Source of the DNA: Zygnema circumcarinatum SAG 698-1b
Lineage: Eukaryota; Plantae; Zygnematophyceae
Length of the DNA stretch: 64,000 bases
Reading direction: 5' to 3'
Assembly (NCBI GenBank): GCA_037447605.1
Contig: CM074822.1
Span: 1,201,492-1,265,491 of the forward strand
Shown here: positions 4,458 through 63,459 of the stretch, one piece after another
Layout of the letters: every line of letters starts with the position of its first letter
Numbering within the stretch: the first letter of the stretch is position 1
Translations under genes and position numbers: made by a program
Notes under the pieces: model-generated
Told to the model about the DNA's origin: nothing
The model's input: only the letters and a program-made list of their open reading frames with translations
Databases searched by the model: none

Positions 4458-10071
<5,614 letters not shown>

Positions 10072-13133: not shown

Positions 13134-17196
<4,063 letters not shown>

Positions 17197-23796: not shown

Positions 23797-24708
23797 CGAA
23801 CGAGAACAGGAAACCTCTGCGCCATTTTAATTTACAAAAATTCTCAACCTAGTTTCACCCTTCTGCCATGCGAGGTGGGTAAGGGGGACGGGCCAATTGG
23901 AATACGCCACGTATCAGAAATATCCACGTGGCATGTTTTCATTGGAGGATACATGGCATTGTTGAAAAAAAAGGCCCGGGGGAGGGAAGGTGGCGGTTGG
24001 CAATCAGTACTGATTTCGGGATTTTACGGGCAGGATAAAAAACATAGAGACGAAATCGAAAGGGACAGGTACTGATTCTATTGTTATTGGGCAGGAAGAA
24101 AAATGTTGGAGAGGCGAAAATCGCGACAGCGGACTTTGCAGGAATGCGAAGAATATTTTTCGGGCAGATTATTGGATAGAAAAATAATAACAGAATTGTC
24201 CAAATTCTTGAAATTTCGAATTGGACTACAGAAATGGAGATGCGTAAAAAAACATTTCGTTTTTTTAGTTTTACGGGCGTACCAGGGCAGCGGTTTCTGC
24301 CGTTTGAAAGTTTTCTGGAAGGGACAAAAGTTGGGTCCTTTGCTCCTTTCTTTGGGCCATTTTGTCGTGTAGCGCGGACGTTTCTCGGCCTCTGAAGGTT
24401 CAGGTCTGGTGTTCGAGACCTGAATTTTCGATTGCCGGCCTTTTTGATTTTATTTCATTTCCAATTTTATGAGAGAATAATTTGAATTTGAATTTGAAAT
24501 TGGCACATGGACAGAAGATCAATAATGTTGTGGACGATGGGATTCGGCAACCAACCATTGGAGGTCCATTGGATGGCAATGGTTGGCGGGCCAATGGTTG
24601 GCAACCATTGAATCCAATGATTGGCACCATTGGGAATGGCTGGCTGGGTCGCGAATCAATGTTTCAACATTGCCAGCCATGCCGCCAAGTTTGTGAGAGC
24701 CGACCAAA

Positions 24709-25408
24709 CATGGACATGGACATGGGCATGGACATGGACATGGACATGGGCATGGACATGGACATGGGCATGGACATGGACATGGACATGGGCATGGGCA
24801 TGGGCATGGACATGGACATGGACATGGACATGGACATGGACATGGGCATGGACATGGACATGGACATGGACATGGACATGGACATGGACATGGACATGGA
24901 CATGGACATGGACATGGGCATGGACATGGACATGGACATGGGCATGGGCATGGACATGGACATGGGCATGGACATGGACATGGACATGGACATGACACAT
25001 GGACATGGACATGGACATGGACATGGACATGGGCATGGACATGGACATGGACATGGACATGGACATGGACATGGACATGGACATGGGCATGGACATGGAC
25101 ATGGACATGGACATGGACATGGACATGGGCATGGACATGGACATGGGCATGGACATGGACATGGGACACATGGACATGGGCATGGGCATGGACATGGACA
25201 TGGACATGGGCATGGACATGGACATGGACCTGAACATGGACGTGGGCATGGACATGGGCATGGGCATGGACATGGACATGGACATGGACATGGGCATGGA
25301 CATGGACATGGGCATGGACATGGACATGGGCATGGACATGGACATGGGCCTGAACATGGACGTGGGCATGGACATGGGCATGGACATGGACATGGACATG
25401 GACATGGA

Positions 25409-25466
<58 letters not shown>

Positions 25467-28197
25467 GACATGGACATGGGCATGGACATGGACATGGGCA
25501 TGGACATGGACATGGACATGGACATGGACATGGACATGGACATGGGCATGGACATGGACATGGACATGGACATGGACATGGACATGGACATGGACATGGA
25601 CATGGACATGGACATGGACATGGACATGGACATGGACATGGACATGGACATGGACATGGGCATGGACATGGACATGGACATGGACATGGACATGGACATG
25701 GGCATGGACATGGACATGGGCATGGACATGGACATGGGCATGGACATGGACATGGGCATGGACATGGACATGGACATGGACATGGACATGGACATGGACA
25801 TGGGCATGGGCATGGACATGGACATGGGCATGGACATGGACATGGGCATGGACATGGACATGGACCTGAACATGGACGTGGGCATGGACATGGGCATGGG
25901 CATGGACATGGACATGGACATGGACATGGACATGGACATGGACATGGACATGGGCATGGACATGGACATGGGCCTGAACATGGACATGGACATGGGCATG
26001 GACATGGACATGGACATGGACATGGACATGGACATGGGCATGGGCATGGACATGGACATGGACATGGGCATGGACATGGATGGGCATGGACATGGACATG
26101 GGCATGGACATGGACATGGACATGGACATGGGCATGGACATGGACATGGGCATGGACATGGACATGGACATGGGCATGGACATGGACATGGACATGGACA
26201 TGGACATGGGCATGGACATGGACATGGACATGGACATGGGCATGGACATGGACATGGACATGGGCATGGACATGGACGTGGGCATGGACACATGGACATG
26301 GACATGGACATGGACATGGACATGGACATGGACATGGACATGGACATGGACATGGGCATGGACATGGGCATGGGCATGGACATGGACATGGACATGGACA
26401 TGGACATGGACATGGACATGGGCATGGACATGGACATGGGCATGGACATGGACATGGACCTGAACATGGATGGGCATGGACATGGACATGGGCATGGACA
26501 TGGACATGGGCATGGACATGGACATGGACATGGGCATGGACATGGACATGGACATGGACATGGGCATGGACATGGACATGGACATGGACATGGACATGGA
26601 CATGGGCATGGGCATGGACATGGGCATGGACATGGACATGGACATGGACATGGGCATGGACATGGACATGGGCATGGACATGGACATGGGCATGGACATG
26701 GACATGGGCATGGACATGGACATGGGCATGGACATGGACATGGGCATGGACATGGACATGGACATGGGCATGGACATGGACATGGACATGGGCATGGACA
26801 TGGACATGGACATGGGCATGGACATGGGCATGGACATGGACATGGGCATGGGCATGGACATGGACATGGACATGGACATGGACATGGACATGGACATGGA
26901 CATGGACATGGACATGGACATGAATGGACATGGACATGGGGCATGGTTTATGGTTTATGGTTTATGGGCATGGACATGGACATGGACATGGACATGGGCA
27001 TGGACATGGACATGGACCATGGACATGGACATGGACATGGACCTGAACATGGACGTGGGCATGGACATGGACATGGGCATGGACATGGACATGGACATGG
27101 ACATGGACATGGACATGGGCATGGACATGGACATGGGCATGGACATGGACATGGACATGGACATGGACATGGACATGGACATGGACATGGACATGGACAT
27201 GGGCATGGACATGGACATGGGCATGGACATGGACATGGGCATGGACATGGACATGGACATGGACATGGACATGGACATGGGCATGGACATGGACATGGGC
27301 ATGGACATGGACATGGGCATGGGCATGGGCATGGGCATGGACATGGACATGACATGAACATGGTTTTATGGGCGTGGGCATGGTTTATGGGCATGGAGCA
27401 TGGACATGGACATGGGCATGGACATGGACATGAACTGAACATGGGCGTGGGCATGGACATGGGCATGTGGACATGGACATGGGCATGGACATGGGCATGG
27501 AGCATGGACATGAACATGGACATGGTTTTATGGTTTATGGTTTATGGACATGGACATGGTTTATGGGCATGGGCATGGTTTATGGACATATGGACATGGG
27601 CATGGACATGGACATGGGCATGGACATGGACATGGACCTGAACATGGACGTGGGCATGGACATGGACATGGGCATGGACATGGACATGGGCATGGACATG
27701 GGCATGGACATGGACATGGGCATGGACATGGACATGGACCTGAACATGGACGTGGGCATGGACATGGGCATGGACATGGACATGGGCCTGAACATGGACG
27801 TGGGCATGGACATGGAGCATGGTTTATGGACATGAGCATGGACATGGACGCTGGGCATGGTTATGGACATGGACATGGACATGGACATGGAGCATGGGCA
27901 TGAACATGGACATGGACATGGGCATGGACATGGACATGGGGCATGGTTTTATGGACATGGGGCATGGTTTATGGTTTATGGTTTATGGACATGAGCATGG
28001 ACATGGACATGGGCATGGACATGAACATGGGCATGGACATGGGCATGGACATGGTTTATGGACATGAACATGGGCGTGGGCATGGACATGGGCATGGACA
28101 TGGACATAGGCATGGTTTATGGACATGGGCATGGGCATGGACATGGGGCATGGTTTATGGGCATGGACATGGACATGGACATGGACATGGACATGGA

Positions 28198-39763: not shown

Positions 39764-41220
39764 CTCTACAGTCAGGTAAAAACCCCATTCAGTACCCTAG
39801 AGAGAGCAGAGATGGTTTATTATTGTTCACAGAACTACCTGAAGCAGACCTGCAACGCTCCAACGGACCACATTCTGCACAGAACCACCCTCCCGTTCGC
39901 CTTTGCAGGAAAATCGCTGAAAGACTCGACCAACCTGCAAAGCAAACCTCATAAAAATTTTGATCAAGTGAAACTAAGTTAGCTCTCCCACTCTTCTCTC
40001 TCTCCCCCACCGTTCCTCGACCCCCTCTCCTTCTCTCGCTCTCCCACTCTTTCCCACTCTTGGCCTCGGTCTGTTTCTCCTCTCCTCCCTCTCTCGCTCC
40101 TTCCGACCTCACCCCTCTCCCTCTCCCTCTCCCTCTCTCTCTTGCACTCTCTCTCTCTCTTCTTCGCCCCCATTTTCCCTCGTCTCCCTTACCCTCCTCC
40201 CACTCTCCCACACTTTCACTCTCTTGCCCTCGGTCTGTTTCTCTCTCCCCTCTCCCCCTCGCCNNNNNNNNNNCCTCTCTCTCTCTCTCTCCCTCTCCCT
40301 CTCCCTCTCCCTCTCCCTCTCCCTCTCTCTCTCCCTCCCTCCCTCCCTCTCTCCCTCCCTCCCTCCCTCCCTCTCTCCCTCTCTCTCACTCTCTTTTCTA
40401 TCTTCCTACTCACCTACCTCTACAGTCAGGTAAAAACCCCATTCAGTACCCTAGAGAGAGCAGAGATGGTTTATTATTGTTCACAGAACTACCTGAAGCA
40501 GACCTGCAACGCTCCAACGGACCACATTCTGCACAGAACCACCCTCCCGTTCGCCTTTGCAGGAAAATCGCTGAAAGACTCGACCAACCTGCAAAGCAAA
40601 CCTCATAAAAATTTTGATCAAGTGAAACTAAGTTAGCTCTCCCACTCTTCTCTCTCTCCCCCACCGTTCCTCGACCCCCTCTCCTTCTCTCGCTCTCCCA
40701 CTCTTTCCCACTCTTGGCCTCGGTCTGTTTCTCCTCTCCTCCCTCTCTCGCTCCTTCCGACCTCACCCCTCTCCCTCTCCCTCTCCCTCTCTCTCTTGCA
40801 CTCTCTCTCTCTCTTCTTCGCCCCCATTTTCCCTCGTCTCCCTTACCCTCCTCCCACTCTCCCACACTTTCACTCTCTTGCCCTCGGTCTGTTTCTCTCN
40901 NNNNNNNNNCCCCCCCCCCCCCCCCCAAGAATATAAAATTGGTTTAAAATTTCTAGGATAGACCCTACCACATATTCTTATTTTTACCGCAAGGTCTTCC
41001 ATAACTGCAGCTGCTCAATATATGCAAAATGCACAAGCATCATCGAAAATGATAATTTGAGTGCAATGCTCCTTCAAGCCATGAAGGGAGAGGGCAGGCC
41101 CCCCCTGCTTACCTCCCAGAGCCCATCCAATGGGTCCAAACCCTCTGCAAGGGCAGCTCCGCCAAAGATTTCCACTCCCACCTGCTCCCTCTCTTCCTTT
41201 CCAGCATCAATATTTACTCG

Positions 41221-43609: not shown

Positions 43610-46600
43610 ATGGATACGCAGGAGAAGCTGAATATGAGTCTGGACGAGCTCTCGGCGCAGACCAATGGGAGGAGGGGGTCGTACCCCCTCGCGCTGAGGA
43701 AGATGCAGAGGAGGCCTGCGCCCTACAGGCCCTACACGGCCGGGCGGGGAGGTGGCGTGGCCGACAGGCGGCCGAGTTTGGGGAGGGGAGTGGGAAGGTC
43801 GGCACTCGAACGCGTGATTTTAGGGTTAGAGTTAGGGTTAGGAAGTGGGAGAGAGGGAGAGTTAGGGTTAGGGTTAGGGTTAGAGAGTGGGAGAGAGAGG
43901 GAGTTGGGGTTAAGGAGTGGGAGAGAGAGGGAGTTAGGGTTAGGGTTAAGGTTAAGGAGTGGGAGAGAGAGGGAGTTAGGGTTAGGGAGGGGTGTAAGTC
44001 TAGGGTTGAAGAGAGGGGTGGAGGTCAGGGTGAGAGGGAGGGAGTTAGGAGACATGACAGGGGCTTGACTTAAGGTTTGGTTGTTCAGAAGTTTGGGTGT
44101 GCAATATAGCATGAAGGAAGAGGAGTGGAGGCTTGAGCAGCAGTTGGTGGTTTGCTGCTGTTTGAAGAATTGCTGATGGATTTCTAGGTTATATTCTGTT
44201 CAGGGTTAGGGGAGAATAACTTATTTTTGGGGCACTCTAAAGATATGACTTTGGGAACAGGAAGGAGAAGTAGAGGATGGAGGTGGCAGGTGGAGATGAG
44301 GTATAAGAGAGAGGGGAGAGGAGGGCGGAGGGAGGAGGGAGGGGGGAGGAGGGAGNNNNNNNNNNGGAGGGAGGAGGGAGGAGGGACGAGCAAGGAGCGA
44401 GGAGGGAGGAGGAAGGAGGGAGGTGGAGAGGAGAGAGGTGGGAGGAAGGAGGGAGGAGAGGAAGGAGGCTGGTGTTGAGGAAGGGAGGAGGAAGGAGGTT
44501 GAAGGGAGAATGGAGGAGGGTGATGGGACAGGAAGGGAGAGGAGAGGAGGAGAGAGAAGGATGTGTTTGTTGAAAGGATTCTGTGATGATGAAGATGGGA
44601 AATGAAAGGAAGCAGAAGGTGTGGGAGTGAGAGTTGCTGTAAGGAATGAAGGAGAATTTTTCCTGCGTGTAGGAAATTATGATGATGAAGGGAAGTGATG
44701 GCTGGAGAAGGATGGAAGTGTGGATGTGAAGTGGTGATTCTGTGTGGAAGGACGAAGAATGTTAGTATGCTTTTTAGGGTTTCAGAGACATAGGATCGTT
44801 TGCAGTAGGCAGTGAGCCCATCGAAAGAAGGGAAATTTTGACGAGCTTCTGCTTGGACCCATTTCACTGTCCAAGACGATGGAGGAGGCTATACACCTGC
44901 TGAATCCTCATTTGTCTTTTTGCTGGGAAACTCAATCATGACTGGAGGCATAGGTACTGGAAGTATGCGGACTTGTGGGAGCTCTCTCACGTCCGCTCTC
45001 TCTCTCTCTGTCTCAAGTTGTACCTACGGATTTGTGTACATGTGTAAGGTGAGGGAAGAAGTGGAGTTCCGTGCAGGATGGGGATGGAGCGTTGTAACAA
45101 CTGCATGCAAACCGGCCACTTTGCAAGGGACTGCCCTAACGAGACTCTATGCCGTAAATGTGGCCAACCGGGGTCAGTTTCTCTCCCTGCTGCTGAACAA
45201 GCAGATGAACTTAACAGAGTTTTCAGCTTCTGAGTGTGACATTGCTGATTAAAGCCTGCAATTTTACATGTTTTTTTCTTATCCTGTTTCTTTTCTTTGT
45301 TTCACGTTGCAGGCATTTGGGTTACGAGTGCAACAATCCAGTGGTCTGCCACAACTGTAACGAAGAGGGACACCTGGCAGCAGCTTGCCCTTCAGGAACA
45401 TCGAATGAGGGCACAATGTGCTACAACTGTCATGGATTGGGCCACGTGGCAGCCAACTGCCCTTCAAAGGGAGACCCATATGCGGTTGCGCACGTGCCAA
45501 AATCCCAGGTAAGTCGTCAGAGTGTTTAGAGCTAACGTTTTTCCGGGAAAAGAATATGCTATTCACTAAAATCAGAAGAAATGGTTTGAACTAATACCTG
45601 AAGCATGAAAGTAATAATCTGTCAAAGCTACGCATTCAGTCCCGCTGTACGGTCAGTTGCACTTTTATTCCAAAGAATAAATGCAAGAAGGTCATGCTCT
45701 AGACCAACCCCGTTGAGGGAGAGGGAGAGGGAGAGGGAGAGAGAGAGGGAGAGGGAGAGGGAGAGTCTCATCGACAAGAACTCGACCGGTCAGAAACTAA
45801 GCACTAGCAATCCAATAACATTCCTTTGAACACAACAACAGAAGCAACAATCGAAACACTGCCTGAACTAACCGACTGAACCTCACTTCCTAAACATGTT
45901 CCAGCTTTGCAACAACTGCAACAAGCCCGGCCATATTGCTGCCTTCTGCACTGCCGAATCTGCATGCAACAACTGCCGCCAACCCGGTCACCGTGCTATT
46001 GACTGCCCCAACGATCCCGTCTGCAACAAATGTGGAGTCTCTGGCCATTTCGCGCGGGAGTGCACCTCCTCCTCTGCCCAAATGGGACCCATCTGCAGGA
46101 GCTGCGGTTTAGCAGGACATCTCGCAAGGACTTGCCCTAACGGTCGACCATTTGTGGTGAGTCGCAGATGAACAGTCAGAGGTGATGAGGGAGAGGGAGA
46201 GAGTGAGAGAGGGAGAGAGGAGGGGGAGAGGAGGGAGAGAGGGAAAGGGAGGGAGTGAGAGCGAGGGAGAGCGGAGAAAGTGGGGGAGAGCGAGAGTGAG
46301 AGAGGGGGAGAGGAGAGAAGAGAGGGAAAGGGAGGGAGTGAGAGTGAGGGAGAGTGGAGAAAGAGGGGAAGAGCGAGAGTGAGAGAGGGGAGTGGAGAGA
46401 GCGAGGGAAAGGGAGCGAGTGAGAGTGAGGGAGAGTGGAGAGTGGAGAAAGAGGGAGAGAGCGAGAGTGAGAGAGGGGGAGAGGAGAGAGCGAGGGAAAG
46501 GAAGGGAGTGAGAGTGAGGGAGAGTGGAGAGTGGAGAAAGAGGGGGAGAGCGAGAGGGAGAGAACGCGAGAGGCGAGAGAGGAAATCAAGAGGCCATTTT

Positions 46601-49456: not shown

Positions 49457-52400
49457 ATGGAACCCATTCGGAATGTGTTGGGGCGCATTAAGTCCCAGCC
49501 CTTGGTAGCTGTTAGCGTTGCGGCCGTTGCCTTTGCTTGGCAGTTCCTCTCCTTCGATGCACTCCTTCTCCTCGTGTCCGCGCTTTCAATAGCTGTGCTC
49601 CTATTTGAGGGGGGGAGGAAGGCTACGCCGGATGTTGAGGCTGAAGCCACGGTTGCCCCTGAGGTGAAGCCGAAGGAGGAGCAAGTGAAAGATGTTGGAG
49701 GAGAAAAGACTTCAAAAACAGGTGAGGATTGATGGAATGATGTATTTTATGGAGGATGAAGTGTGGCTATGATAATGGTAGAAGGCAGCAGGACAACTCT
49801 GCGTCTCTCTCTCTCTCTCTCTCTCCCTCTCTCTCTCTTTCTCTATATATATAGCTGCCCTTTCTCTGCCGCCCGCCTCTCCTTCTGTGTTTGTTTCTTT
49901 GCGTTTTTCCTCTCCTCCTTTCCGTCCTCTCTCCTCTCCCCCACCTTCCCCCCCTCTCTCGTAGGTCCAGCCATTGCTCGGCATCATTTCACATCAGTTA
50001 CATCTTTCCATTTGCATGCTCTAAAGGTAGGCTGCATTTTAGTAGAGAAGTGTTTACTTGATTTAGTCCGTTGCTCCATTCTTCTAATTCGTCCATTCAA
50101 TGTTGTACTGCCAGTTGCAACTCGCCGCCGGCCTCCGCCACCGACTCCTGGAAGTAAGTCTATCGTTCCCCTTTTTTCAACTCTCTTTGAGATTTAGGTC
50201 TTGTTATTGCTAAACCTGAGCTTCCACTAGAGAGAAGCTGTTTTATTTATTTTGTCCTGTCCCTAAACTACCAATTAATTTCAGGTTTTTCCTTTGTAAT
50301 GCAGAATCTGGAATCGCCCAGTTCATGTGGCGCCATGGAGGCTCTTCTGTGGAGGTGTTCGGAAGCTTCTCGGAAGGCGCCTCTGTAGCAATGGAGCCTT
50401 CCAAGGTGGAAACAGGCACCTTTTTCCTCCACTATGCGTGCCCACAGGGGAAAATTCAATACAGGTATGTAGTTATTATGGTTTGATTGAAATTATCTTT
50501 TGACTTTTTCCTTCATCCTGAACCAAGTGAGGATTTGAATGATAGTGATTCCATCTGAACTAGAAATGAGCCTTCACTGAATCTCCTCCTCGGATCCACC
50601 TTGGTTGTTGATCTGGGATCAGGTTCAAAGTGGATGGCAAGGAGCAAGTTGATCCGGAATCTCCAGTCAGTTCAGATAACTGGAACATTGCGGAAGTTAC
50701 AAGGGACTGCCATTCAGTTCTACAAAGCATGATGAAGGAACGGATTCTGATAATAGATGGAGCCATGGGAACAATGATTCAGAGACACAAGTTGCAGGAA
50801 AAAGACTTCCGTGGGGAAAGATATGTGAATCACTCCCACGATCTTAAGGGAGATAATGATCTGCTTGTTATCACTCGCCCGGATGTGATCGAGGAAATTC
50901 ATACCCAATATCTCGATGCAGGCTCCGATATCATAGAAACAAATACCTTTAACGGAACTTCGATTTCTCAAGCTGACTATGAACTGCAAGCACACGACGA
51001 GGTGGTTCTAATTAACATCGAAGCAGCGAGAGTGGCTAACCTTGCAGTTGAAAAAGTGACTAAGAAGAATCCCTCTCGTCCTCGTTTTGTTGCGGGAGCA
51101 GTCGGCCCCACTAATAAAACTCTCTCAGTTTCACCAAGTGTTGAAAATCCAGCTTTTAGAGCCTGCACTTTTGACGAAATTGTGGCTGCATATAGAGAGC
51201 AAGTGGAAGCTCTCCTTGAAGGGGGGATCGATCTATTGTTGGTAGAGACGATATTTGACACTTTGAATGCGAAAGCTGCTCTTTTCGCGATCGATCAACT
51301 GTTTGATGAACTGGGTTATGAAATTCCGATCATGATAAGTGGAACTATTGTGGATCAGAGTGGGAGAACACTTTCTGGGCAGACTGGAGAAGCATTTTGG
51401 GTCTCTGTTCAGCATGCGAATCCGTTGGCTGTCGGACTGAACTGCGCTCTGGGAGCGAGAGATATGCGGTCATATGTGGATACCCTCAATAAGGTACTAA
51501 CAATTCTCTTTATCAACGTTTTTAGTCATGTAATTCATTAAAGTTGTTGGTATTCTGGTATAGTAAGGAGTTCTATTTTGTGCTTTATTTATTTTCCAAT
51601 ACGAAGGGGTGGAAATTTTTGGAAGTTTTTTCAACTTTCGACTTTCTTTTTCTTCCTCAGATTGCAGAGACCTTCATCCTCTGCTACCCAAATGCCGGCC
51701 TTCCAAATGCAATGGGGGGATATGATGAGACCGGTCCTCAGTTTGCGGATAATATCGCCGACTTTGCTTCCGGAGGACTCATCAACATCATCGGAGGTTG
51801 CTGCGGTACAACTCCGGATCATATTCAAGCTGTAGCGAACACGGTGACTCTCTCTCCCCTTCTCTGTCTCTCTCTCGTCTTTCTCGCTCCCTCTCGCTCT
51901 TCCCCCTCTATCTCTTCTCTCTCTTCCCTCCTCCCTGTCTCTCTCCTCCACTCTCCCTTCTCTCTCCCCCCTCTGTCTGTCCTTTCCACTCTTTTCCTTC
52001 TCTCTTTTCCCCCTCTCTTTTCTCACCCCTCCTATCTCTTTCCTCTCTCTAGCTTTCCTCTCCCCTTTCTCTCCCCTATCTTTTTTCCTTTCCCCTCCTC
52101 TCCCTCTTCTCTCCTCTCTCTCCTCTCTCTCGCTCTCTCTTCCACCTCCAAATGCTAAATGCCAGGAATAGCTTAATCCGACACACTGAACTTACCAAAA
52201 CCTTACCTTTGCAGATTCCCCATGATTCCCAAATGCCTCACTCTTTCCTTGTCCACTCCTTCCTTTCCTTCCCTTTCCCCTCTCATTCCCTCTCTCTCTA
52301 TGTGTTCGCAGGTCAAGTCCCGCAAACCCCGTCCCGTCCCCAAAGTCCGAAACTTGATGCGAATTAGTGGTTTAGAGCCTTTGAATTACATTCCCGAGAC

Positions 52401-55400
52401 CATTCCCTTCATCAACATTGGCGAAAGATGCAATGTGGCCGGGTCCGCCATATTCAAGAAAGCAGTAATCAACAACGACTGGGACAAGGCTCTCAGTATC
52501 GCTGTGGCTCAGGTCGAGGCCGGGGCACAAGTGATAGATATCAATTTCGATGAGGGGCTATTGGACTCCGTCGCATGCATGACTCGCTTTGTGAATCTTC
52601 TCGTTTCTGAGCCCGAGGTGAGAGAGGCCATTCCCACGAAGGAAAATTTCTTTTGTTGAAGGGATTGAGTTGTTTTTTGCGGCACTGAAAGTGATTTATG
52701 TGGGACAGGAGACCTTGAGTTTGTTTGTTTGCTGCATTTTGGGTTTTAGGTGGTATTCTTATGCTTTCTGTCTATTTCTTCTCTCTCTCTCGTTCTCTAT
52801 TGTTTCCCTCTCTCTACCTCCATCCTTCCCCTCCCTCTCTCTCTTTAGTTTCCCTCTCTCTATCTCCATTCTTCCCCTCTCTCTTTTGCTTCCCTCTCTC
52901 TATCTCCATGCTTCCCCTCTCTCTCTTTTTTGTTTCCCTCTCTGTATCTCCATTCTTCCCCTCTCCCTCTCCCCCACTCTCTCACTCTCACTTTCTCTCC
53001 AATTCTGCAGGTGGCCAAAGTCCCTTTCATGATTGACAGCAGCAAGTTCCATGTGGTGGAAGCGGGTCTGAAATGCTCCCAAGGGAAGTGCATTGTCAAT
53101 TCCATCTCTCTCAAGGAGGGAGAGGAAGCATTCCGAAAGTATGCCAAAATTGTGAAAAGACATGGAGCCGCCGTTGTAGTTATGGCATTCGATGAAGAAG
53201 GGCAGGCCGCTACAGAATTCGATAAAGTCAGAATTTGTTCTCGAGCATACAAAATTCTCGTGGAGGAAGTGGGATTTAACCCAGAAGATATCATTTTCGA
53301 CCCCAATATTTTGACTATTGCAACGGGGTTGGAAGAACATAACAATTACGCTGTCGATTTTATCAATGCAACTCGTAAGATCAAAATTGTTTGTCCCGGA
53401 GCTAAAATCAGTGGAGGAGTTTCAAACATTTCTTTCTCCTTCCGTGGGAATGAACCCGTTCGCCGAGCATTCCATTCTGCCTTTCTGTATCATGCTATAA
53501 AGGCAGGCATGGATATGGGAATTGTGAATGCTGGACAGATCGATATTTATGATGATATTGACAAAATTCTCTTAGAGCATGTAGAGGATTGTCTGCTTAA
53601 CCGCCGTCCGGATGCAACAGAACGAATGCTTGAATTAGCACAAAAAATTGATCCCAAAGCAGTAGGAGCAGACAACTCCCAGAAGAATGTATGGAGAGAG
53701 GAGCCGGTAAACAAGAGACTTCAATATGCTTTAGTGAAAGGAATTGATCAGTTTGTAGTAGACGATGTTGAGGAGGCAAGAACATGCGGAAAATACCTCC
53801 GACCCCTTCACATCATTGAGGGGCCACTAATGGATGGAATGAATGTAGTGGGAGACCTTTTTGGGGCAGGAAAGATGTTTCTTCCTCAGGTTATTAAGAG
53901 TGCTCGGGTGATGAAGAGGGCAGTTGCTCACCTTATTCCCTTTATGGAGAAGGAGAAGGAGTTGGCTAAGCTGGCCAATCCTGAGCTTGAACAGCAGTCG
54001 AATGCAGGAACTGTTGTTCTCGCTACAGTGAAGGGAGATGTGCATGATATCGGAAAGAACATTGTTGCTGTAGTTTTAGGTTGTAACAACTACACAGTCA
54101 TAGATTTGGGAGTTATGTGCTCTTTCCCCAAAATTCTTGAAGCATGTAGGGAGCATAAGGCAGATATTGTGGGTCTTTCGGGACTCATTACTCCCTCCCT
54201 TGATGAGATGGTAACAGTAGCGAGAGAGTTGGAGAGAGAGGGATTCCGGATTCCTCTACTTATAGGGGGTGCTACCACATCTCGAATGCATACTGCTGTG
54301 AAGATTGAGCCTAACTATGGTGCCCCTGTAGTCTATGTACTGGATGCTTCTAGAAGTGTTCCGGTAGTCTCCAGTCTATTGGACCCTAACATGAAAGAAG
54401 ACTATATTGCTGATGTTAGGGAGACCTATGCTCAGCTTCGAGAGGAGCATTATGCTGGTCTTGAGGAGAGGAAATATATTCCTATTAGCAAAGCGAGGGA
54501 TTTGCGATTACAGGTGGATTGGAAACTTCCGCAGAATGTTCCGGTGAAACCTACCTTTTTGGGAACAAAGATTTGGGATAATTATCCATTGGAGAAGCTC
54601 ATCGATTGCATCGATTGGAATCCCTTCTTTCAGGTTTGGCAGCTTCGAGGGCGATACCCTAACCGAGGGTATCCCAAAATTTTCAATGATGAAACGGTGG
54701 GAGAGGAAGCAAAGAAACTTTTCGCAGAGGCTCAGACTATGCTTGGAGAGATTGTGAGGAAGAAGAAGCTGAGGGTTAGGGGAATCATTGGTCTCTATGC
54801 GGCAAATTCAGTTGGAGATGATATTAAGCTTTACAGTGATGAATCGAGAGTATCTGAATTGGGGACTCTTCACACGTTGAGACAGCAAGCAGAGAAGGAA
54901 TCGGATGACCCATATTTGGCCTTAGCAGATTTCATAGCTCCCCGGGAGAGTGGAGTGGCCGACTATGTGGGTATGTTCGTTGTATCTGCTGGGTTTGGGT
55001 TGGATGAGTTAGTGGCTAAGTATAAGTCAGCCAATGATGACTACAGTTACATTATGGCAGAGGCCTTGGCTGACCGACTAGCTGAAGCAGCAGCAGAGGT
55101 TTTGCATAGAGAGGTGAGGAAAAACTATTGGGGCTATGCTAAAAATGAGAATTTGGGGGTGGAAGACCTTCTCAAGGTGAAGTATAAGGGAATTCGCCCT
55201 GCTGCGGGTTACCCTTCTCAGCCGGACCATACAGAGAAGGAGTTCATGTGGAAGCTGATGAAGGTGGAGGAGAAGACAAAGATTTCTCTAACGGAATCTA
55301 TGGCGATGTTGCCGGCAGCTTCCGTTTCAGGACTGTACTTTGCGGGAGAGAAAAGCTCCTATTTCGCTGTGGGGAAGATCACGGAAGATCAAGTGAAAGA

Positions 55401-55476
55401 CTATGCGGGAAGGAAGGGGATGCCTTTGGAGGAGTGTCAGAAGTGGCTCGGACCCATGCTTAACTACGAGCCTTAA
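49457..55476 (+). CDS. METH: Cobalamin-dependent methionine synthase (METH/MTR) with an N-terminal hydrophobic anchor and a CBM48-like domain, ~1416-1429 aa
   Basis: Exons 49457-49721, (probable 39-nt exon 50115-50153), 50305-50464, 50623-51493, 51661-51843, 52312-52617 and 53011-55476, with consistent phases. Contains [19 protein letters not shown] and GGCCG (Zn ligands), the pterin-binding domain [11 protein letters not shown], the B12-binding motif [13 protein letters not shown]...[10 protein letters not shown], and the AdoMet activation domain [14 protein letters not shown]. Confidence 0.96.
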
Positions 55477-59531: not shown

Positions 59532-62500
59532 CTACAAAGTAAAATTCTCAATGAGTTCGGGGGTGTGCCTCTCATAGCTTCCATCGAGAAGCTCCGCCCC
59601 CAACTGTCCTTTGCTCCCGGAGCCACATGTGAGCACTGTTCCGTTCTCCGTTAAAGCCAACATGTGGGCGTCCCAATGTCCGGCGTTGGAGGGGCTGACT
59701 TGAACCACGCGGTCGCCAGATGGCAAATGCTCTAAAGCAGGCATACGTTTGGGGCGAAACACATCCTTTCTCCGATGCTGGAGAGGGAGAGGGAGAGGGA
59801 GAGGGAGAGGGAGAGGGAGAGGGAGAGGGAGAGGGAGAGGGAGAGGGAGAGGGAGAGGGAGAGGGAGAGGGAGAGGGAGAGGGAGAGGGAGAGGGGGAGG
59901 GGAGGGAGAGGGAGAGAGAGGGAGAGGGAGAGGGAGAGGGAGAGGGAGAGGGAGAGGGAGAGGGAGAGGGAGAGGGAGAGGGAGAGGGAGAGGGAAGAGG
60001 GAAGAGGGAGAGGGAGAGGGAGAGGGAGAGGGAGAGGGAGAGGGAGAGGGAGAGGGAGAGAGAGGGAGAGGGAGAGGGAGAGGGAGAGGGAGAGGGAGAG
60101 GGAGAGGGAGGGAGAGGGAGAGGGAGAGGGAGAGGAGAGGGAGAGGGAGAGGGAGAGGGAGAGGGAGAGGGAGAGGGAGAGCGAGAGGGAGAGGGAGAGG
60201 GAGAGCAAGAGGAAGAGCGAGAGGGAGAGCGAGAGGGAGAGGGAGAGGGAGAGGGAGAGGGAGAGGGAGAGGGAGAGGGAGGGAGAGGGAGAGGGAGAGG
60301 GAGAGGGAGAGGGAGAGGGAGAGGGAGAGGGAGAGGGAGAAGGGAGAAAGAGAGGGAGAGGGAGAGGGAGAGGGAGAGGAAGAGGGAGAGGGAGAGGGAG
60401 AGAGGGAGAGGGAGAGGGAGAGGGAGAGGGAGAGGGAGAGGGAGAGGGAGAGGGAGAGGGAGAGGGAGAGGGAGAGGGAGAGGGAGAGGGAGAGGGAGAG
60501 GGAGAGGGAGAGGGAGAGGGAGAGGGAGAGGGAGAGGGAGAGGGAGAGGGAGAGGGAGAGGGAGAGGGAGAGGGAGGAGGGAGAGGGAGAGGGAGAGGGA
60601 GAGGGAGAGGGAGAGGGAGAGGGAGAGGGAGAAGGAGAGGGAGAGGGAGAGGGAGAGGGAGAGGGAGAGGGAGAGGGAGAGGGAGAGGGAGAGAGGGAGA
60701 GGGAGAGGGAGAGGGAGAGGGAGAGGGAGAGCGAGAGGGAGAGCGAGAGGGAGAGGGAGAGGGAGAGGGAGAGGGAGAAGGAGAGAGGGAGAGGGAGAGG
60801 GAGAGGGAGAGGGAGAGGGAGAGGGAGAGGGAGAGGGAGAGGGAGAGGGAGAGGGTGAGGGAGAGGGAGAGGGCGAGGGAGAGGGAGAGGGCGAGTGAGG
60901 TGAGGGAGAGGGAGAGGGAGAGGGAGAGGGAGAGGGAGAGGGAGAGGGAGAGGGAGAGGGAGAGGGAGAGGGAGAGGGAGAGGGAGAGGGAGAGGGAGAG
61001 GGAGAGGGAGAGGGAGAGGGAGAGGGAGAGGGAGAGGGAGAGGGAGAGGGAGAGGGAGAGGGAGAGAGAGAGGGAGAGAGGGAGAGGAGAGGGAGAGGGA
61101 GAGGGAGAGGGAGAGGGAGAGGGAGAGGGAGAGGGAGAGGGAGAGGGAGAGGGAGAGGGAGGGAGAGGGAGAGGGAGAGGGAGAGGGAGAGGGAGAGGAG
61201 GAGCAGAGGGAGAGGGAGAGGGAGAGGGAGAGGGAGAGGGAGAGGGAGAGGAGAGGGAGAGGGAGAGGGAGAGGGAGAGGGAGAGGGAGAGGGAGAGGGA
61301 GAGGAGAGGGAGAGGGAGGAGGGAGAGGGAGAGGGAGAGGGAGAGGGAGAGGGAGAGGGAGAGGGAGAGGGAGAGGGAGAGGGAGAGGAGAGGGAGAGGG
61401 AGAGGGAGAGGGAGAGGGAGAGAGAGGGAGAGAGGAGTGGGAGAGGGAGAGGGAGAGGGAGAGGGAGAGGGAGAGGGAGGGAAGAAGGAAGAGAGAGGGA
61501 GCGGGAGAGGGAGAGGGAGAGGGAGAGGGAGAGGGAGAGGGAGAGGGAGAGGGAGAGGGAGAGGAGAGGGAGAGGGAGAGGGAGAGGGAGAGGGAGAGGA
61601 GAGGAGAAGGAGAGGGAGAGGGAGAGGGTGAGGTGAGGCTAGGGCGAGGGAGAGAGGGAGAGGGAGAGGGTGAGGGAGAGGGAGAGGGAGAGGGAGAGGG
61701 AGAGGGAGAGGGAGAGGGAGAGGGAGAAGGAGAGGGAGAAGGAGAGGGAGAGGGAGAGGGAGAGGGGAGTCAAATTCAGGTTCAAAGTTCCGAAAAGAGA
61801 AAGAATATGCTAATGGAATCGATCAGTTTTTCAATGACAACGAAATGAATGTGCTTTTACATATGTACTGTAACAAAGAAGCTCAACTCACCGGTCTCTC
61901 ACCATCCCCATCTCCGTCTCCGTCTCCCTCTCCCTCCCCATCGCCTCCTCCCACCTCTCCCACTCCCTGCCCGAGACAAGATGACTCCCCATTCCCAAAC
62001 GACCACACCTCCCCTCCACTCCCAACAACAAACGTGGTGTAATCACCAGCCGCCACGTGGCACACTTTTGTCGTTTCCGGCCCTCCCAAACCCTCCACCA
62101 CTCTCGGAAAAAGCTCACATTGGTCGCTCCCATGTCCCAAACATCCATGCCGACCCCATCCCCATGTGGCCACTCTCCCATCCATAGAGAGAGCGGCTGC
62201 ATGCCACGCGCCAGCGGCGACTGCCATTGGCTGAAAATTTAGGGTTCCAAAATGCTCAATTTTCCGAGGCAAGCGTTCGTCGCTTCGGCTTCCATGACCG
62301 AGCTTTCCACCGAGACCGCAACCGACAGACCAGACAGATCTGGGGAGGTGGGAGAGGGGAGAGAGGTAGAGAGTGGGAGAGGAGGAGAAAGGGAGAGAAG
62401 GAGAGAAGCGAGAGGGGAGAGGGACAGTGGGTAGAGGGGAGAGGGAGAGAGGGGAGAAGGCGATAGGGGAGAGGGAGACAGACAGGGGAGAGGAGAGAGG

Positions 62501-63459
62501 GGAGAGGGACAGTGGGTAGTGGGGAGAGGGAGAGAGGGGAGAAGGCGATAGGGGAGAGGGAGACAGGGGAGAGGAGAGAGGGGCGAGGGACAGTGGGGAG
62601 AGGAGAGAGGGAGAGGGAAGAGGGGGGAGGGAGAGAGGCGAGAGGGAGAAAGGGAAGAGGGCGAGAGGGGGGAGGAGAGTGGAGGAGAGAGAGAGAGTGG
62701 GGGTGAGAGTGGCGGTAGGGAGAAAGAAAGGGGGAGATGAGAGGGGAGAGGGAGTGGAGGGAGCGAGGATGGGAGATGAAGAGGGGGAGGGGAGAGAGGT
62801 GCGGGAATAAGGAAGGGCGGGACAAAAAGTGGAGAAAAGGGAGAGAAGGAAGAGTGAGACGGAGGGAGGCAAGACAAAAAAAACAGAGAAAGACAGGAGA
62901 TAAACAGTTAACATTAGGATTTTTTTACTAGAGACAAAGAGATTGTATGAAGCCCTCTGTCTCTCTCCTTCCTCCGCTTTCTACTCTCTTCTCCCCCTTC
63001 TCCTCCTCTTCCCCGCTTTTCCTTTCACACTCACTCTCCCTCCAACTGCCTCTCCCTCTCTCATCCCAGATCCCTCCTCAACCCCTCAGTCCTCTCTCCC
63101 TCTCCCTCTCCCTCCTCCCTCCATAACCCCTCCCCCTCTCACATCCCTCGATCGCCCCCGCTCCCGCACCTCCCCCTCACCCCCATTCTCCGTCTTCCTC
63201 CCTCTCCCTCTCCCTCTCCCTCTCCCTCTCCGCCCTCCCTCACCCACCTGCCATTCTCTCCACAGGCGAGAGCCAGCAGATAACAATGTCCCCCTGCGAT
63301 CTGCACCACTGGCAGGCTGCCAAGTGGCCCTTCCAGGACACGTGGCATCATGTCATTGGAGTCTGTCGCGTGGCCCAGCCTCTCCTTCTCCCCCCATGCC
63401 AGAGTGTACACCCTCCCCTCTCGCGATAAAACTGCTGTAAAAAAACTCCCCATAGAAAC
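59532..63459 (-). CDS. RCC1-repeat (UVR8-like beta-propeller) protein; 5' exons lie outside the window
   Basis: Exons 63459-63248, 62339-61892 and 59777-59532, with consistent phases. Motifs [62 protein letters not shown] and HMLALTENG...GQLG match a conserved plant RCC1 family protein. It is not UVR8 itself. Confidence 0.9.
59781..61765. repeat. (GAGAGG)n hexamer microsatellite filling the last RCC1 intron
   Basis: About 2 kb of near-perfect repeat, reading (CCTCTC)n on the sense strand and ending directly at the CAG acceptor. Confidence 0.96.

What the first reader, a model, noticed from the sequence alone, without database searches (positions are those of the whole stretch)
49457..50760. 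B12-dependent methionine synthase fused to a membrane anchor and an AMPK-beta-like CBM48 domain
Seen in sequence: the exon 50623-51493 reads without a stop from [26 protein letters not shown] (the C-terminal strands of a CBM48/AMPK1_CBM fold) straight into [16 protein letters not shown], the normal start of METH. The fusion is therefore inside one exon and does not depend on a splice guess. The preceding exon supplies [16 protein letters not shown]...CPQGKIQYR. The first coding exon adds a ~35-aa hydrophobic stretch ([36 protein letters not shown]) and a charged linker. Established: E. coli MetH and human MTR are soluble and begin at the homocysteine-binding domain. I do not know of this ~175-190 aa extension being described. 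Inference: a membrane-tethered methionine synthase, possibly coupling Met/SAM synthesis to a membrane (ER, plastid envelope, lipid droplet), to a cobalamin import site, or to a carbohydrate/SnRK1 signal.
Basis: partly seen in the sequence, partly recalled or inferred. Interest (0 to 1): 0.88.

Follow-up and report, generated by a model that had tools for sequence, protein, structure and literature searches.

The report
Membrane-anchored methionine synthase with degenerate CBM48
This alga's vitamin-B12-dependent methionine synthase really does carry an extra N-terminal piece, a predicted membrane anchor plus an AMPK-beta-like domain that has lost its sugar-binding residues; relatives share it, and no paper I could find describes it.

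Summary
A seven-exon GT-AG model (49457-55476, + strand) gives a 1429-aa protein. It consists of a 36-residue bipartite hydrophobic segment, an acidic linker, an RRRPPPP mini-exon, an AMPK-beta-type CBM48 beta-sandwich, and then a complete five-module METH. The CBM48-to-METH junction lies inside exon 4.

The same layout, with the same intron positions, is present in Closterium and in an unnamed Logan genomic contig. It also occurs as an uninterrupted transcript ORF in a close relative (P0121) and in NCBI Closterium gene models. Chlorophyte and prasinophyte METHs (Prasinococcus, Cymbomonas, Auxenochlorella, a marine metagenome picoalga) carry a comparable N-terminal hydrophobic segment but no CBM48. 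The anchor therefore looks ancestral to green algae, and the CBM48 looks like a streptophyte addition.

All ten METH-linked CBM48 sequences examined have Gly where AMPK beta1 has W100, and lack K126 and W133. W100G abolishes glycogen binding in AMPK, so canonical glucan binding is unlikely here.

Best reading: a cytosol-facing, endomembrane-tethered METH whose CBM48 acts as a protein-docking or spacer module. Membrane association, the identity of the membrane and the physiological role are all untested. I found no paper describing this, although database entries already carry the Pfam hit. It is a new variant of a known enzyme, of moderate to high interest.

The parts
49457..49721 (+). Coding exon 1. 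Holds the start ATG, a short basic N-terminal stretch ([14 protein letters not shown]), the bipartite hydrophobic segment P15-F50 (49499-49606), a basic flank (GGRK) and an acidic/lysine-rich linker.
   Evidence: ORF and translation. KD19 peak 2.4. Equivalent first exons in Closterium L001 9029-9353 and L004 1924-2170. Codon position 2 is conserved and position 3 is near random. No Pfam family.
50115..50153 (+). Coding exon 2, a 39-nt mini-exon encoding (V)[12 protein letters not shown]. It carries a conserved basic/proline motif just before the CBM48.
   Evidence: AG/GT borders, in frame. Equivalent 51-nt exons with an RRPPP(P/K) motif in L001 and L004. The same motif occurs in the P0121 transcript ORF and in Coleochaete P0003.
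50305..50464 (+). Coding exon 3, the N-terminal two thirds of the CBM48 / AMPK1_CBM beta-sandwich (…[26 protein letters not shown]…CPQGKIQY). G126 sits where AMPK beta1 has W100.
   Evidence: Pfam AMPK1_CBM 20.3 bits on this piece alone. The exon is exactly 160 nt, in the same phase, in the window, L001 and L004. Coding signature.
50623..50728 (+). 5' part of exon 4: the last CBM48 strands ((R)[14 protein letters not shown]…NIAEV) and the connecting helix. R155 and E162 sit at the AMPK beta1 K126 and W133 positions.
   Evidence: Open frame from 50612. The custom beta-CBM profile aligns across the exon 3/4 junction at 55.8 bits. Alignment A3.
50729..50734 (+). In-frame ATG ATG (M191, M192) just before [13 protein letters not shown]. 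This is a possible internal or alternative start that would give a soluble METH.
   Evidence: Sequence. Met is not conserved here in Mesotaenium P0001 (…NLCRERIL…).
50735..51493 (+). Rest of exon 4: the homocysteine-binding (S-methyl_trans) module, including the GLNCALG zinc-ligand cysteine.
   Evidence: Pfam PF02574, 237 bits.
51661..51843 (+). Exon 5: the end of the S-methyl_trans module, including GGCCGTTP.
   Evidence: Pfam PF02574, 67.5 bits. Model check.
52312..52617 (+). Exon 6: the start of the pterin-binding module.
   Evidence: Pfam PF00809. Borders.
53011..55476 (+). Exon 7: the rest of Pterin_bind, then B12-binding_2, B12-binding (DVHDIG) and the Met_synt_B12 activation domain (RPAAGYP), then the stop codon.
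   Evidence: Pfam PF00809, PF02607, PF02310, PF02965. 81% identity to Mesotaenium METH.

Best explanation
The locus encodes one 1429-aa protein: a complete cobalamin-dependent methionine synthase preceded by about 190 residues.

Residues 15-50 form two short hydrophobic helices joined by a short turn and flanked on both sides by basic residues. The most likely arrangement is a helical hairpin inserted from the cytosolic side of an endomembrane (ER-type membrane, lipid-droplet surface or an organelle outer membrane). Both ends, and therefore the catalytic modules, would stay in the cytosol.

A disordered acidic linker and a conserved RRPPPP motif lead into an AMPK-beta-type CBM48 beta-sandwich. 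A single helix fuses this to the homocysteine barrel. Because the two stacking tryptophans and the lysine of the AMPK glycogen site are replaced (G126, R155, E162), the module probably does not bind alpha-glucan. It more likely serves as a rigid spacer or a protein-docking surface.

The anchor is shared with chlorophyte and prasinophyte METH. The CBM48 is found only in the streptophyte branch.

Shown: the gene structure, the fold, the residue replacements, the conservation, and the transcripts in relatives.
Inferred: membrane insertion, topology, which membrane, and purpose. My preferred purpose is to hold METH at the endomembrane where imported cobalamin emerges (CBA1 is ER/endomembrane-associated), or where methyl demand is high.
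For: Gene model: all introns are GT-AG, giving 1429 aa. The protein is 77% identical end to end to P0121, with gaps only in the linker. All five METH Pfam modules are present.

Same four-exon N-terminal layout in other genomes: Closterium NIES-67 genomic DNA (L001) and a Logan genomic contig (L004). Exon 3 is 160 nt in all three.

Transcript evidence in relatives: P0121 is an uninterrupted 4452-nt ORF on two independently assembled ~5 kb contigs, each with an in-frame stop in the 5' leader. The NCBI gene models of Closterium NIES-64, NIES-65 and Naga37s-1 carry the whole extension.

Anchor across green algae: 21 of 104 METH hits begin with Met and have KD19 >= 1.6. Twenty of them are green-lineage sequences (Prasinococcus cluster, Cymbomonas cluster, Auxenochlorella, a Tara metagenome picoalga, and streptophytes). 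The other, P0111, is an unplaced Logan model that looks mispredicted. In-frame stops lie upstream of their ATGs.

Structure: AF2 of P0121:1-620 gives helices 15-33 and 39-54, a disordered 55-145, and a beta-sandwich at 156-233 with pLDDT 92-96. The CBM-only model matches AMPK beta CBM structures (TM about 0.8, rmsd about 2.1 A, top 46 hits).

Profile and sequence matches. Loss of W100/K126/W133 in all ten METH-CBMs. W100G and K126Q abolish glycogen binding: PMC6274970.

Phylogeny: green METH forms one clade with streptophyte and chlorophyte subclades. The window falls in the streptophyte subclade.

CBA1 is ER/endomembrane-associated and abundant in a lipid-droplet proteome: PMC10828217.
Against: - There is no RNA or protein evidence for this organism's own gene.
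- The Coleochaete scutata transcript ORF (P0003, labelled complete) has the CBM48 but no hydrophobic segment. The anchor is therefore not universal, or isoforms exist.
- Two in-frame ATGs at 50729-50734 could give a soluble form.
- The hydrophobic arms (about 14-19 residues) do not distinguish a monolayer or leaflet hairpin from two short transmembrane spans. pLDDT there is only 59-78.
- Homology of the chlorophyte and streptophyte anchors rests on position and pattern, not on a significant sequence match.
- Non-canonical sugar binding by the CBM48 is not excluded.
- No localisation data for any algal METH was found.
Confidence: 0.65

Rival explanations
1. Anchored METH whose CBM48 is a working glucan-binding module. 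It would attach the enzyme to starch or soluble glucan, or let carbohydrate status tune methionine/SAM synthesis.
For: The domain is a true AMPK1_CBM/CBM48 fold. The AMPK N150-equivalent Asn is retained. CBM48 modules fused to enzymes (SEX4, LSF) are real starch binders and appear among the structural matches.
Against: W100 is Gly, K126 is S/R/H/M and W133 is E/S/K/R in all ten METH-linked sequences. W100G and K126Q each abolish glycogen binding in AMPK beta1 (PMC6274970). In green algae starch is plastidial, whereas a METH anchored with its bulk in the cytosol would not meet it (established knowledge).
Confidence: 0.12
2. The extension is mostly not made. The main transcript starts in or after intron 3 and translation begins at M191/M192, giving an ordinary soluble METH. 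The upstream exons would then be a minor isoform or a leader.
For: In-frame ATG ATG at 50729-50734 immediately before the canonical METH start. Met also occurs at this place in Closterium, L004 and P0003. The Coleochaete ORF lacks the anchor.
Against: Exons 1-3 show protein-level constraint and conserved intron phases across taxa. Full-length transcripts exist in relatives. Mesotaenium has no Met at that position. The CBM48 would be cut in half by any start inside intron 3.
Confidence: 0.1
3. The hydrophobic N-terminus is a cleaved targeting signal (secretory, plastid or mitochondrial) rather than a permanent anchor.
For: It lies at the extreme N-terminus and is followed by a flexible linker.
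Against: The hydrophobic stretch is 36-45 residues and bipartite, far longer than a signal-peptide core. It is unlike hydroxyl-rich transit peptides (sequence; established knowledge). METH needs cytosolic folate, homocysteine and reductase partners.
Confidence: 0.08
4. Annotation artefact: two neighbouring genes (a small TM+CBM48 protein and METH) read together.
For: None beyond the unusual architecture. Some public models (P0001, P0002, and the genes called on L004) split or truncate the N-terminus.
Against: No stop separates the CBM48 from METH inside exon 4. The last CBM strands are encoded only there. Single uninterrupted transcripts occur in relatives. The upstream neighbour is a separate zf-CCHC gene that ends near 46171.
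Confidence: 0.02

Closest known systems
Cobalamin-dependent methionine synthase (E. coli MetH, human MTR, algal METH)
   Same: All five modules in the usual order. The zinc-ligand cysteines (GLNCALG, GGCCG), the DxHxxG cobalamin motif (DVHDIG) and RxxxGY (RPAAGY) are all present. Identity over the C-terminal 821 residues is 61-70% to non-streptophyte eukaryotic METH and 77-81% to streptophyte METH.
   Different: About 190 extra N-terminal residues (hydrophobic hairpin, linker, CBM48). In the 120-protein sample most non-green METHs have only 3-46 residues before the DGAMGT motif. The few longer ones look like mis-modelled N-termini or, in one animal, a possible targeting peptide, and none starting with Met has a credible hydrophobic anchor or a CBM48.
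AMPK/SNF1/SnRK1 beta-subunit carbohydrate-binding module (Pfam PF16561, CBM48)
   Same: Same beta-sandwich. The best sequence matches (1z0n, E 3.6e-7) and the best structural matches are AMPK beta1/beta2 CBMs. Six of the ten single-domain database relatives that I scanned (out of many more) are beta subunits with an AMPKBI domain.
   Different: No AMPKBI domain. Fused to an enzyme rather than to a kinase scaffold. The glycogen-site residues W100, K126 and W133 are replaced.
CBM48-enzyme fusions of starch metabolism (SEX4 / LSF phosphoglucan phosphatases)
   Same: A CBM48 covalently joined to a catalytic domain. They appear as lower-ranked structural matches.
   Different: Those modules bind glucan and the enzymes act on starch. 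Here the partner is a one-carbon enzyme and the glucan site is degenerate.
Hairpin-anchored ER / lipid-droplet proteins (oleosin, promethin/LDAF1)
   Same: A bipartite hydrophobic stretch of about 36-45 residues with a central turn that is often proline-rich, and with both flanks polar or basic. There are weak Pfam hits for chlorophyte METH N-termini: Promethin E 0.0034 and Oleosin E 0.0021.
   Different: Those hits are below the curated cut-offs and may reflect composition only. The window's exon 1 hits no family. No localisation data exist.

Membership tests
Cobalamin-dependent methionine synthase (METH/MetH) | Five modules: S-methyl_trans, Pterin_bind, B12-binding_2, B12-binding, Met_synt_B12 | tested here: met
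   Pfam hits, all above their cut-offs, on exons 4-7.
Cobalamin-dependent methionine synthase (METH/MetH) | Catalytic and cofactor motifs: zinc-ligand cysteines, DxHxxG, RxxxGY | tested here: met
   GLNCALG and GGCCGTTP. DVHDIG and RPAAGYP in the exon 7 translation. Motif identities are from established knowledge of MetH.
Cobalamin-dependent methionine synthase (METH/MetH) | Enzyme activity and B12 dependence | not testable with these tools
   Needs an assay or complementation.
AMPK1_CBM / CBM48 fold family | Profile match to PF16561 | tested here: met
   Orthologues score 35.9 and 45.8 bits against a cut-off of 26.8. Window exon 3 alone scores 20.3 bits (half a domain). The spliced window domain scores 55.8 bits against a profile of non-METH beta-type CBMs, against a shuffle maximum of 8.3. 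Pfam's own model could not be run on the spliced window sequence, because no reference exists for a spliced protein.
AMPK1_CBM / CBM48 fold family | Beta-sandwich fold superposable on AMPK beta CBM | tested here: met
   The AF2 core has pLDDT above 90. The Foldseek top 46 hits are AMPK beta or Sip2, with TM about 0.8 (target-normalised) and rmsd about 2.1 A. This was done on the orthologue P0121, which is 60% and 42% identical to the two window CBM pieces in alignment A1.
AMPK1_CBM / CBM48 as a functional carbohydrate binder | Glycogen-site residues W100, K126, W133 (AMPK beta1 numbering) | tested here: not met
   The window has G126, R155 and E162. All ten METH-linked sequences lack both Trp residues. 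W100G and K126Q abolish binding (PMC6274970).
AMPK/SnRK1 beta subunit | C-terminal AMPKBI (alpha/gamma interaction) domain | tested here: not met
   No PF04739 hit in the window pieces or in the orthologues, whereas beta subunits found in the same search have it.
N-terminal membrane anchor (helical hairpin / signal anchor) | Hydrophobic segment long enough to enter a bilayer, with basic flanks | tested here: met
   P15-F50. KD19 peak 2.4. Flanks are RIK… and …GGRK. The AF2 orthologue model gives helices 15-33 and 39-54.
N-terminal membrane anchor (helical hairpin / signal anchor) | Demonstrated membrane association and topology | not testable with these tools
   Needs fractionation, carbonate extraction, protease protection and imaging.
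Oleosin / promethin lipid-droplet hairpin families | Profile match above the curated threshold | tested here: not met
   The window's exon 1 hits no family. Chlorophyte homologues score 17.6 and 18.2 bits against cut-offs of 27 and 25.

The most novel reading that the evidence does not exclude
Green-lineage METH is ancestrally a hairpin-anchored endomembrane enzyme. It would sit where endocytosed cobalamin leaves the CBA1/ER-endosome route, so that cofactor loading and methionine/SAM regeneration are spatially organised. In streptophyte algae (and possibly hornworts) a sugar-blind AMPK-beta-type CBM48 was then added as a docking site for a partner such as a cobalamin chaperone, the reductase, or a SnRK1-type regulator.
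Probability: 0.25. Interest if true: 0.78.

Novelty: new variant of a known kind. Interest (0 to 1): 0.6.

Why it matters
METH is the reason about half of all algae need vitamin B12, and it has been treated as a soluble cytosolic enzyme.

A conserved membrane anchor across prasinophytes, chlorophytes and streptophyte algae would mean that B12-dependent methionine synthesis is spatially organised in the green lineage. That gives a concrete handle on how imported cobalamin reaches its enzyme, which is an open question in algal B12 biology (CBA1 acts at endomembranes, PMC10828217).

The streptophyte-only CBM48 is a clean example of a carbohydrate module that has been repurposed after losing its sugar site. 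It also marks the METH lineage that persisted up to the ancestor of land plants (PMC11439496).

There is a practical consequence too. Several public gene models cut this N-terminus off (P0001, P0002, and the genes called on L004), so surveys based on the five canonical Pfams miss it.

Tried and rejected
- Two separate genes: rejected. No stop lies between the CBM48 and METH, and relatives have single transcripts.
- M191/M192 as the only start: rejected as the sole explanation, because upstream coding constraint is clear and Mesotaenium lacks Met there.
- Pfam on exon 1: no family. The Oleosin and Promethin hits on chlorophyte N-termini are sub-threshold, so I treat them as a lead only.
- Origin of the CBM48 from the representative search: the top hits are bacterial multi-repeat CBM48 proteins, which rank high only because repeat scores are summed. 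Six of the ten single-domain hits I scanned are beta subunits, but no specific donor could be named. Because that library is clustered at 50% identity, it also hides most full-length fused METHs.
- Lipid-droplet proteome check: the held supplement of PMC4855234 does not contain the protein table, and no paper links METH to lipid droplets.
- Literature searches for CBM48/AMPK1_CBM with methionine synthase, streptophyte METH, membrane-bound METH, and METH1 in Chlamydomonas found no description.
- Source organism: it could not be named. The tree only places the window's METH with Mesotaenium and P0121 in the streptophyte clade.
- Whether the CBM48 docks onto the homocysteine barrel could not be judged, because model coordinates and PAE are not returned.
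- Pfam's own model was not run on the spliced window N-terminus, because a spliced protein has no reference. I used pieces, orthologues and a custom profile instead.
Full report
**What is in the sequence**

The window is eukaryotic nuclear DNA with short GT-AG introns full of CT/GA microsatellites. It reads (R)[53 protein letters not shown]… without interruption.

I extended the model through 50623-51493, 51661-51843, 52312-52617 and 53011-55476. This gives 4290 nt, 1429 codons and a single terminal stop. All five METH Pfam modules are present and above threshold. The usual cofactor and zinc motifs are visible in the translations.

**Is the extension real coding sequence?**

Four lines of evidence say yes.

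- A relative's protein, P0121 (1483 aa), has the same order of parts. It is encoded as an uninterrupted 4452-nt ORF on two independently assembled ~5 kb Logan contigs, each with an in-frame stop in the short 5' leader. These are assembled mRNAs. The window model aligns with it end to end at 77% identity, and gaps occur only in the linker.
- Genomic DNA of Closterium NIES-67 (L001) and an unnamed Logan genomic contig (L004) contain the same four N-terminal exons, unannotated or split by the gene callers. These are a first exon with the hydrophobic segment, a 51-nt mini-exon with RRPPP, a third exon of exactly 160 nt in the same phase as in the window, and a fourth exon that runs from the last CBM strands into METH.
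- The NCBI models of Closterium NIES-64, NIES-65 and Naga37s-1 ('unnamed protein product') carry the complete extension and match my conceptual splice.
- Codon-position identities are those of protein-coding DNA. In exon 3, positions 1/2/3 are 0.54-0.71 / 0.58-0.79 / 0.19-0.48. In exon 1, position 2 is 0.56-0.73 and position 3 is 0.19-0.37, which is the pattern expected when hydrophobicity is maintained.

The upstream neighbour is a separate zf-CCHC gene ending near 46171.

**The CBM48**

Pfam AMPK1_CBM (PF16561) scores 45.8 and 35.9 bits on the Coleochaete (P0003) and Mesotaenium (P0001) N-termini, against a cut-off of 26.8. It scores 20.3 bits on window exon 3 alone. A spliced protein cannot be passed by reference, so I built a profile from twelve non-METH CBMs found. 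The spliced window residues 106-177 score 55.8 bits against it, across the exon 3/4 junction, while the best of 2000 shuffles scored 8.3.

The nearest solved sequences are AMPK beta1/beta2 CBMs (1z0n, E 3.6e-7). An AF2 model of the orthologous domain has a core pLDDT above 90. Its 46 best PDB matches are all AMPK beta or yeast Sip2 CBMs (target-normalised TM about 0.8, rmsd about 2.1 A, about 30% identity), followed by SEX4. Of the ten single-domain database relatives that I scanned, six also carry the beta-subunit AMPKBI domain. The METH proteins have no AMPKBI domain.

The module is degenerate as a sugar binder. In the alignment with beta-type CBMs, all ten METH-linked sequences, from the window and at least seven other sources, have Gly (in one case Glu) where AMPK beta1 has W100. 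They have S/R/H/M at K126 and E/S/K/R at W133. The window residues are G126, R155 and E162. The N150-equivalent Asn is kept. According to the review PMC6274970, W100G and K126Q abolish glycogen binding by the beta1 CBM, and W133 mutations weaken it. So the fold family is met, but the feature that defines function as a glycogen or starch binder is not.

**The hydrophobic N-terminus**

Window residues P15-F50 are hydrophobic, with a polar break (WQFLSFD) in the middle. Basic residues lie on both sides (…GRIKSQ before, GGRK after). Orthologues have the same pattern, often with prolines at the turn.

AF2 on P0121:1-620 predicts two helices (15-33 and 39-54, pLDDT 59-78), a disordered 55-145, the beta-sandwich at 156-233 (pLDDT 92-96), and one helix leading into the homocysteine barrel. 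Short arms, a 5-7-residue neutral turn and positive charge on both flanks fit a hairpin with both ends in the cytosol. That is where METH must work. This topology is inferred, not shown.

**Distribution**

Among the 104 best METH hits that have the DGAMGT motif near the start, 21 begin with Met and carry a hydrophobic N-terminal segment (KD19 >= 1.6). One of these, P0111, is an unplaced Logan model that looks mispredicted. The other 20 belong to the green clade:

- the Prasinococcus capsulatus cluster (P0007);
- the Cymbomonas tetramitiformis cluster (P0009, carried by three independent transcript contigs);
- Auxenochlorella protothecoides (P0040);
- an intronless gene on a Tara Oceans metagenome contig (P0022, L008);
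- the streptophytes.

In-frame stops precede their start codons. These chlorophyte and prasinophyte proteins have the anchor and a basic linker, but no CBM48.

In a maximum-likelihood tree the green METHs form one clade (support 100/99). It divides into a chlorophyte/prasinophyte subclade (100/99) and a streptophyte subclade (99/96). The streptophyte subclade contains the window, which sits nearest to Mesotaenium and P0121. All seven of its sampled members carry the CBM48. The simplest history is an anchor already present in early green algae, with the CBM48 inserted in the streptophyte line. Homology of the anchors is argued from position and pattern only.

There is one exception. The Coleochaete scutata transcript ORF, labelled complete, has the CBM48 but no anchor.

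**Function**

Nothing I could find localises any algal METH. A survey of METH in streptophytes and hornworts lists only the five canonical Pfams (PMC11439496).

The algal cobalamin-uptake protein CBA1 is reported at the plasma membrane and ER-like endomembranes, and among the most abundant proteins of a Chlamydomonas lipid-droplet proteome (PMC10828217). That makes 'METH parked at the membrane where B12 arrives' an attractive hypothesis, but it is untested.

The weak Oleosin and Promethin hits on chlorophyte N-termini point the same way, but they are below threshold.

Alternatives are an organelle outer-membrane signal anchor, and a soluble isoform made from M191/M192.

**Verdict**

The membrane tether is plausible and conserved, but only predicted. 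The carbohydrate and SnRK1 idea is weakened.

The feature is not catalogued in the literature I could search. It is already present, unremarked, in public protein sets with a precomputed PF16561 hit, and the anchor is widespread in green algae. I rate it a new variant of a known enzyme, of moderate to high interest.

Noticed in passing
window 50115-50153; L001 9544-9594; L004 2235-2285: A tiny separate exon (39 or 51 nt) encodes a conserved basic/proline motif just before the CBM48: RRRPPPP in the window, RRPPPK, RRPPPP, KRRPVPK and KRRPAPP elsewhere. It resembles an SH3- or WW-type docking motif. Its role is unknown.
   Followed up: partly
window 59720-61631 (also 1-2500, 6300-8200, 24500-27600): Kilobase-scale strand-asymmetric low-complexity tracts. 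At 60-62 kb, where I read the sequence, this is a (GGGAGA)n hexamer array (GC skew +0.86, AT skew +0.82). These tracts create long spurious ORFs in several frames on both strands.
   Followed up: partly
window 45236-46171 (+): The upstream neighbour encodes several CCHC zinc knuckles (CNBP-like) over at least two exons. It is a separate gene from METH.
   Followed up: partly
window 61883-62911 (-) and 16178-16969 (-): ORFs with RCC1 repeats and with a DEAD-box helicase N-terminal domain, respectively. They are ordinary nuclear genes.
   Followed up: no
window 39789-40211 and 40443-40928 (-), with runs of N near 40300-40450 and 44400: Two ORFs share an identical ~130-aa text on either side of an assembly gap. 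This suggests a tandem duplication or a scaffolding artefact.
   Followed up: no
L001 9770-9800 versus 9900-9930: In Closterium NIES-67 the acceptor region and the first bases of the CBM48 exon (…GTGCGTGCAGAGCTGGG…) occur twice about 130 bp apart. The upstream copy is not followed by an open CBM frame.
   Followed up: no
public models P0001 (Mesotaenium), P0002 (Closterium NIES-67), the genes called on L004, P0285 (Cymbomonas, 2783 aa), P0123 (1601 aa): Several database METH gene models are truncated at the N-terminus, split in two, or fused to neighbours. Domain surveys that rely on them will miss the anchor and the CBM48.
   Followed up: partly
P0121 residues 28-40; L004 exon 1: The turn of the hydrophobic hairpin in P0121 reads P-x5-L-P-x3-P. 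This is the spacing of the oleosin proline knot (P-x5-S-P-x3-P, recalled from memory). The window and Closterium lack prolines there.
   Followed up: no
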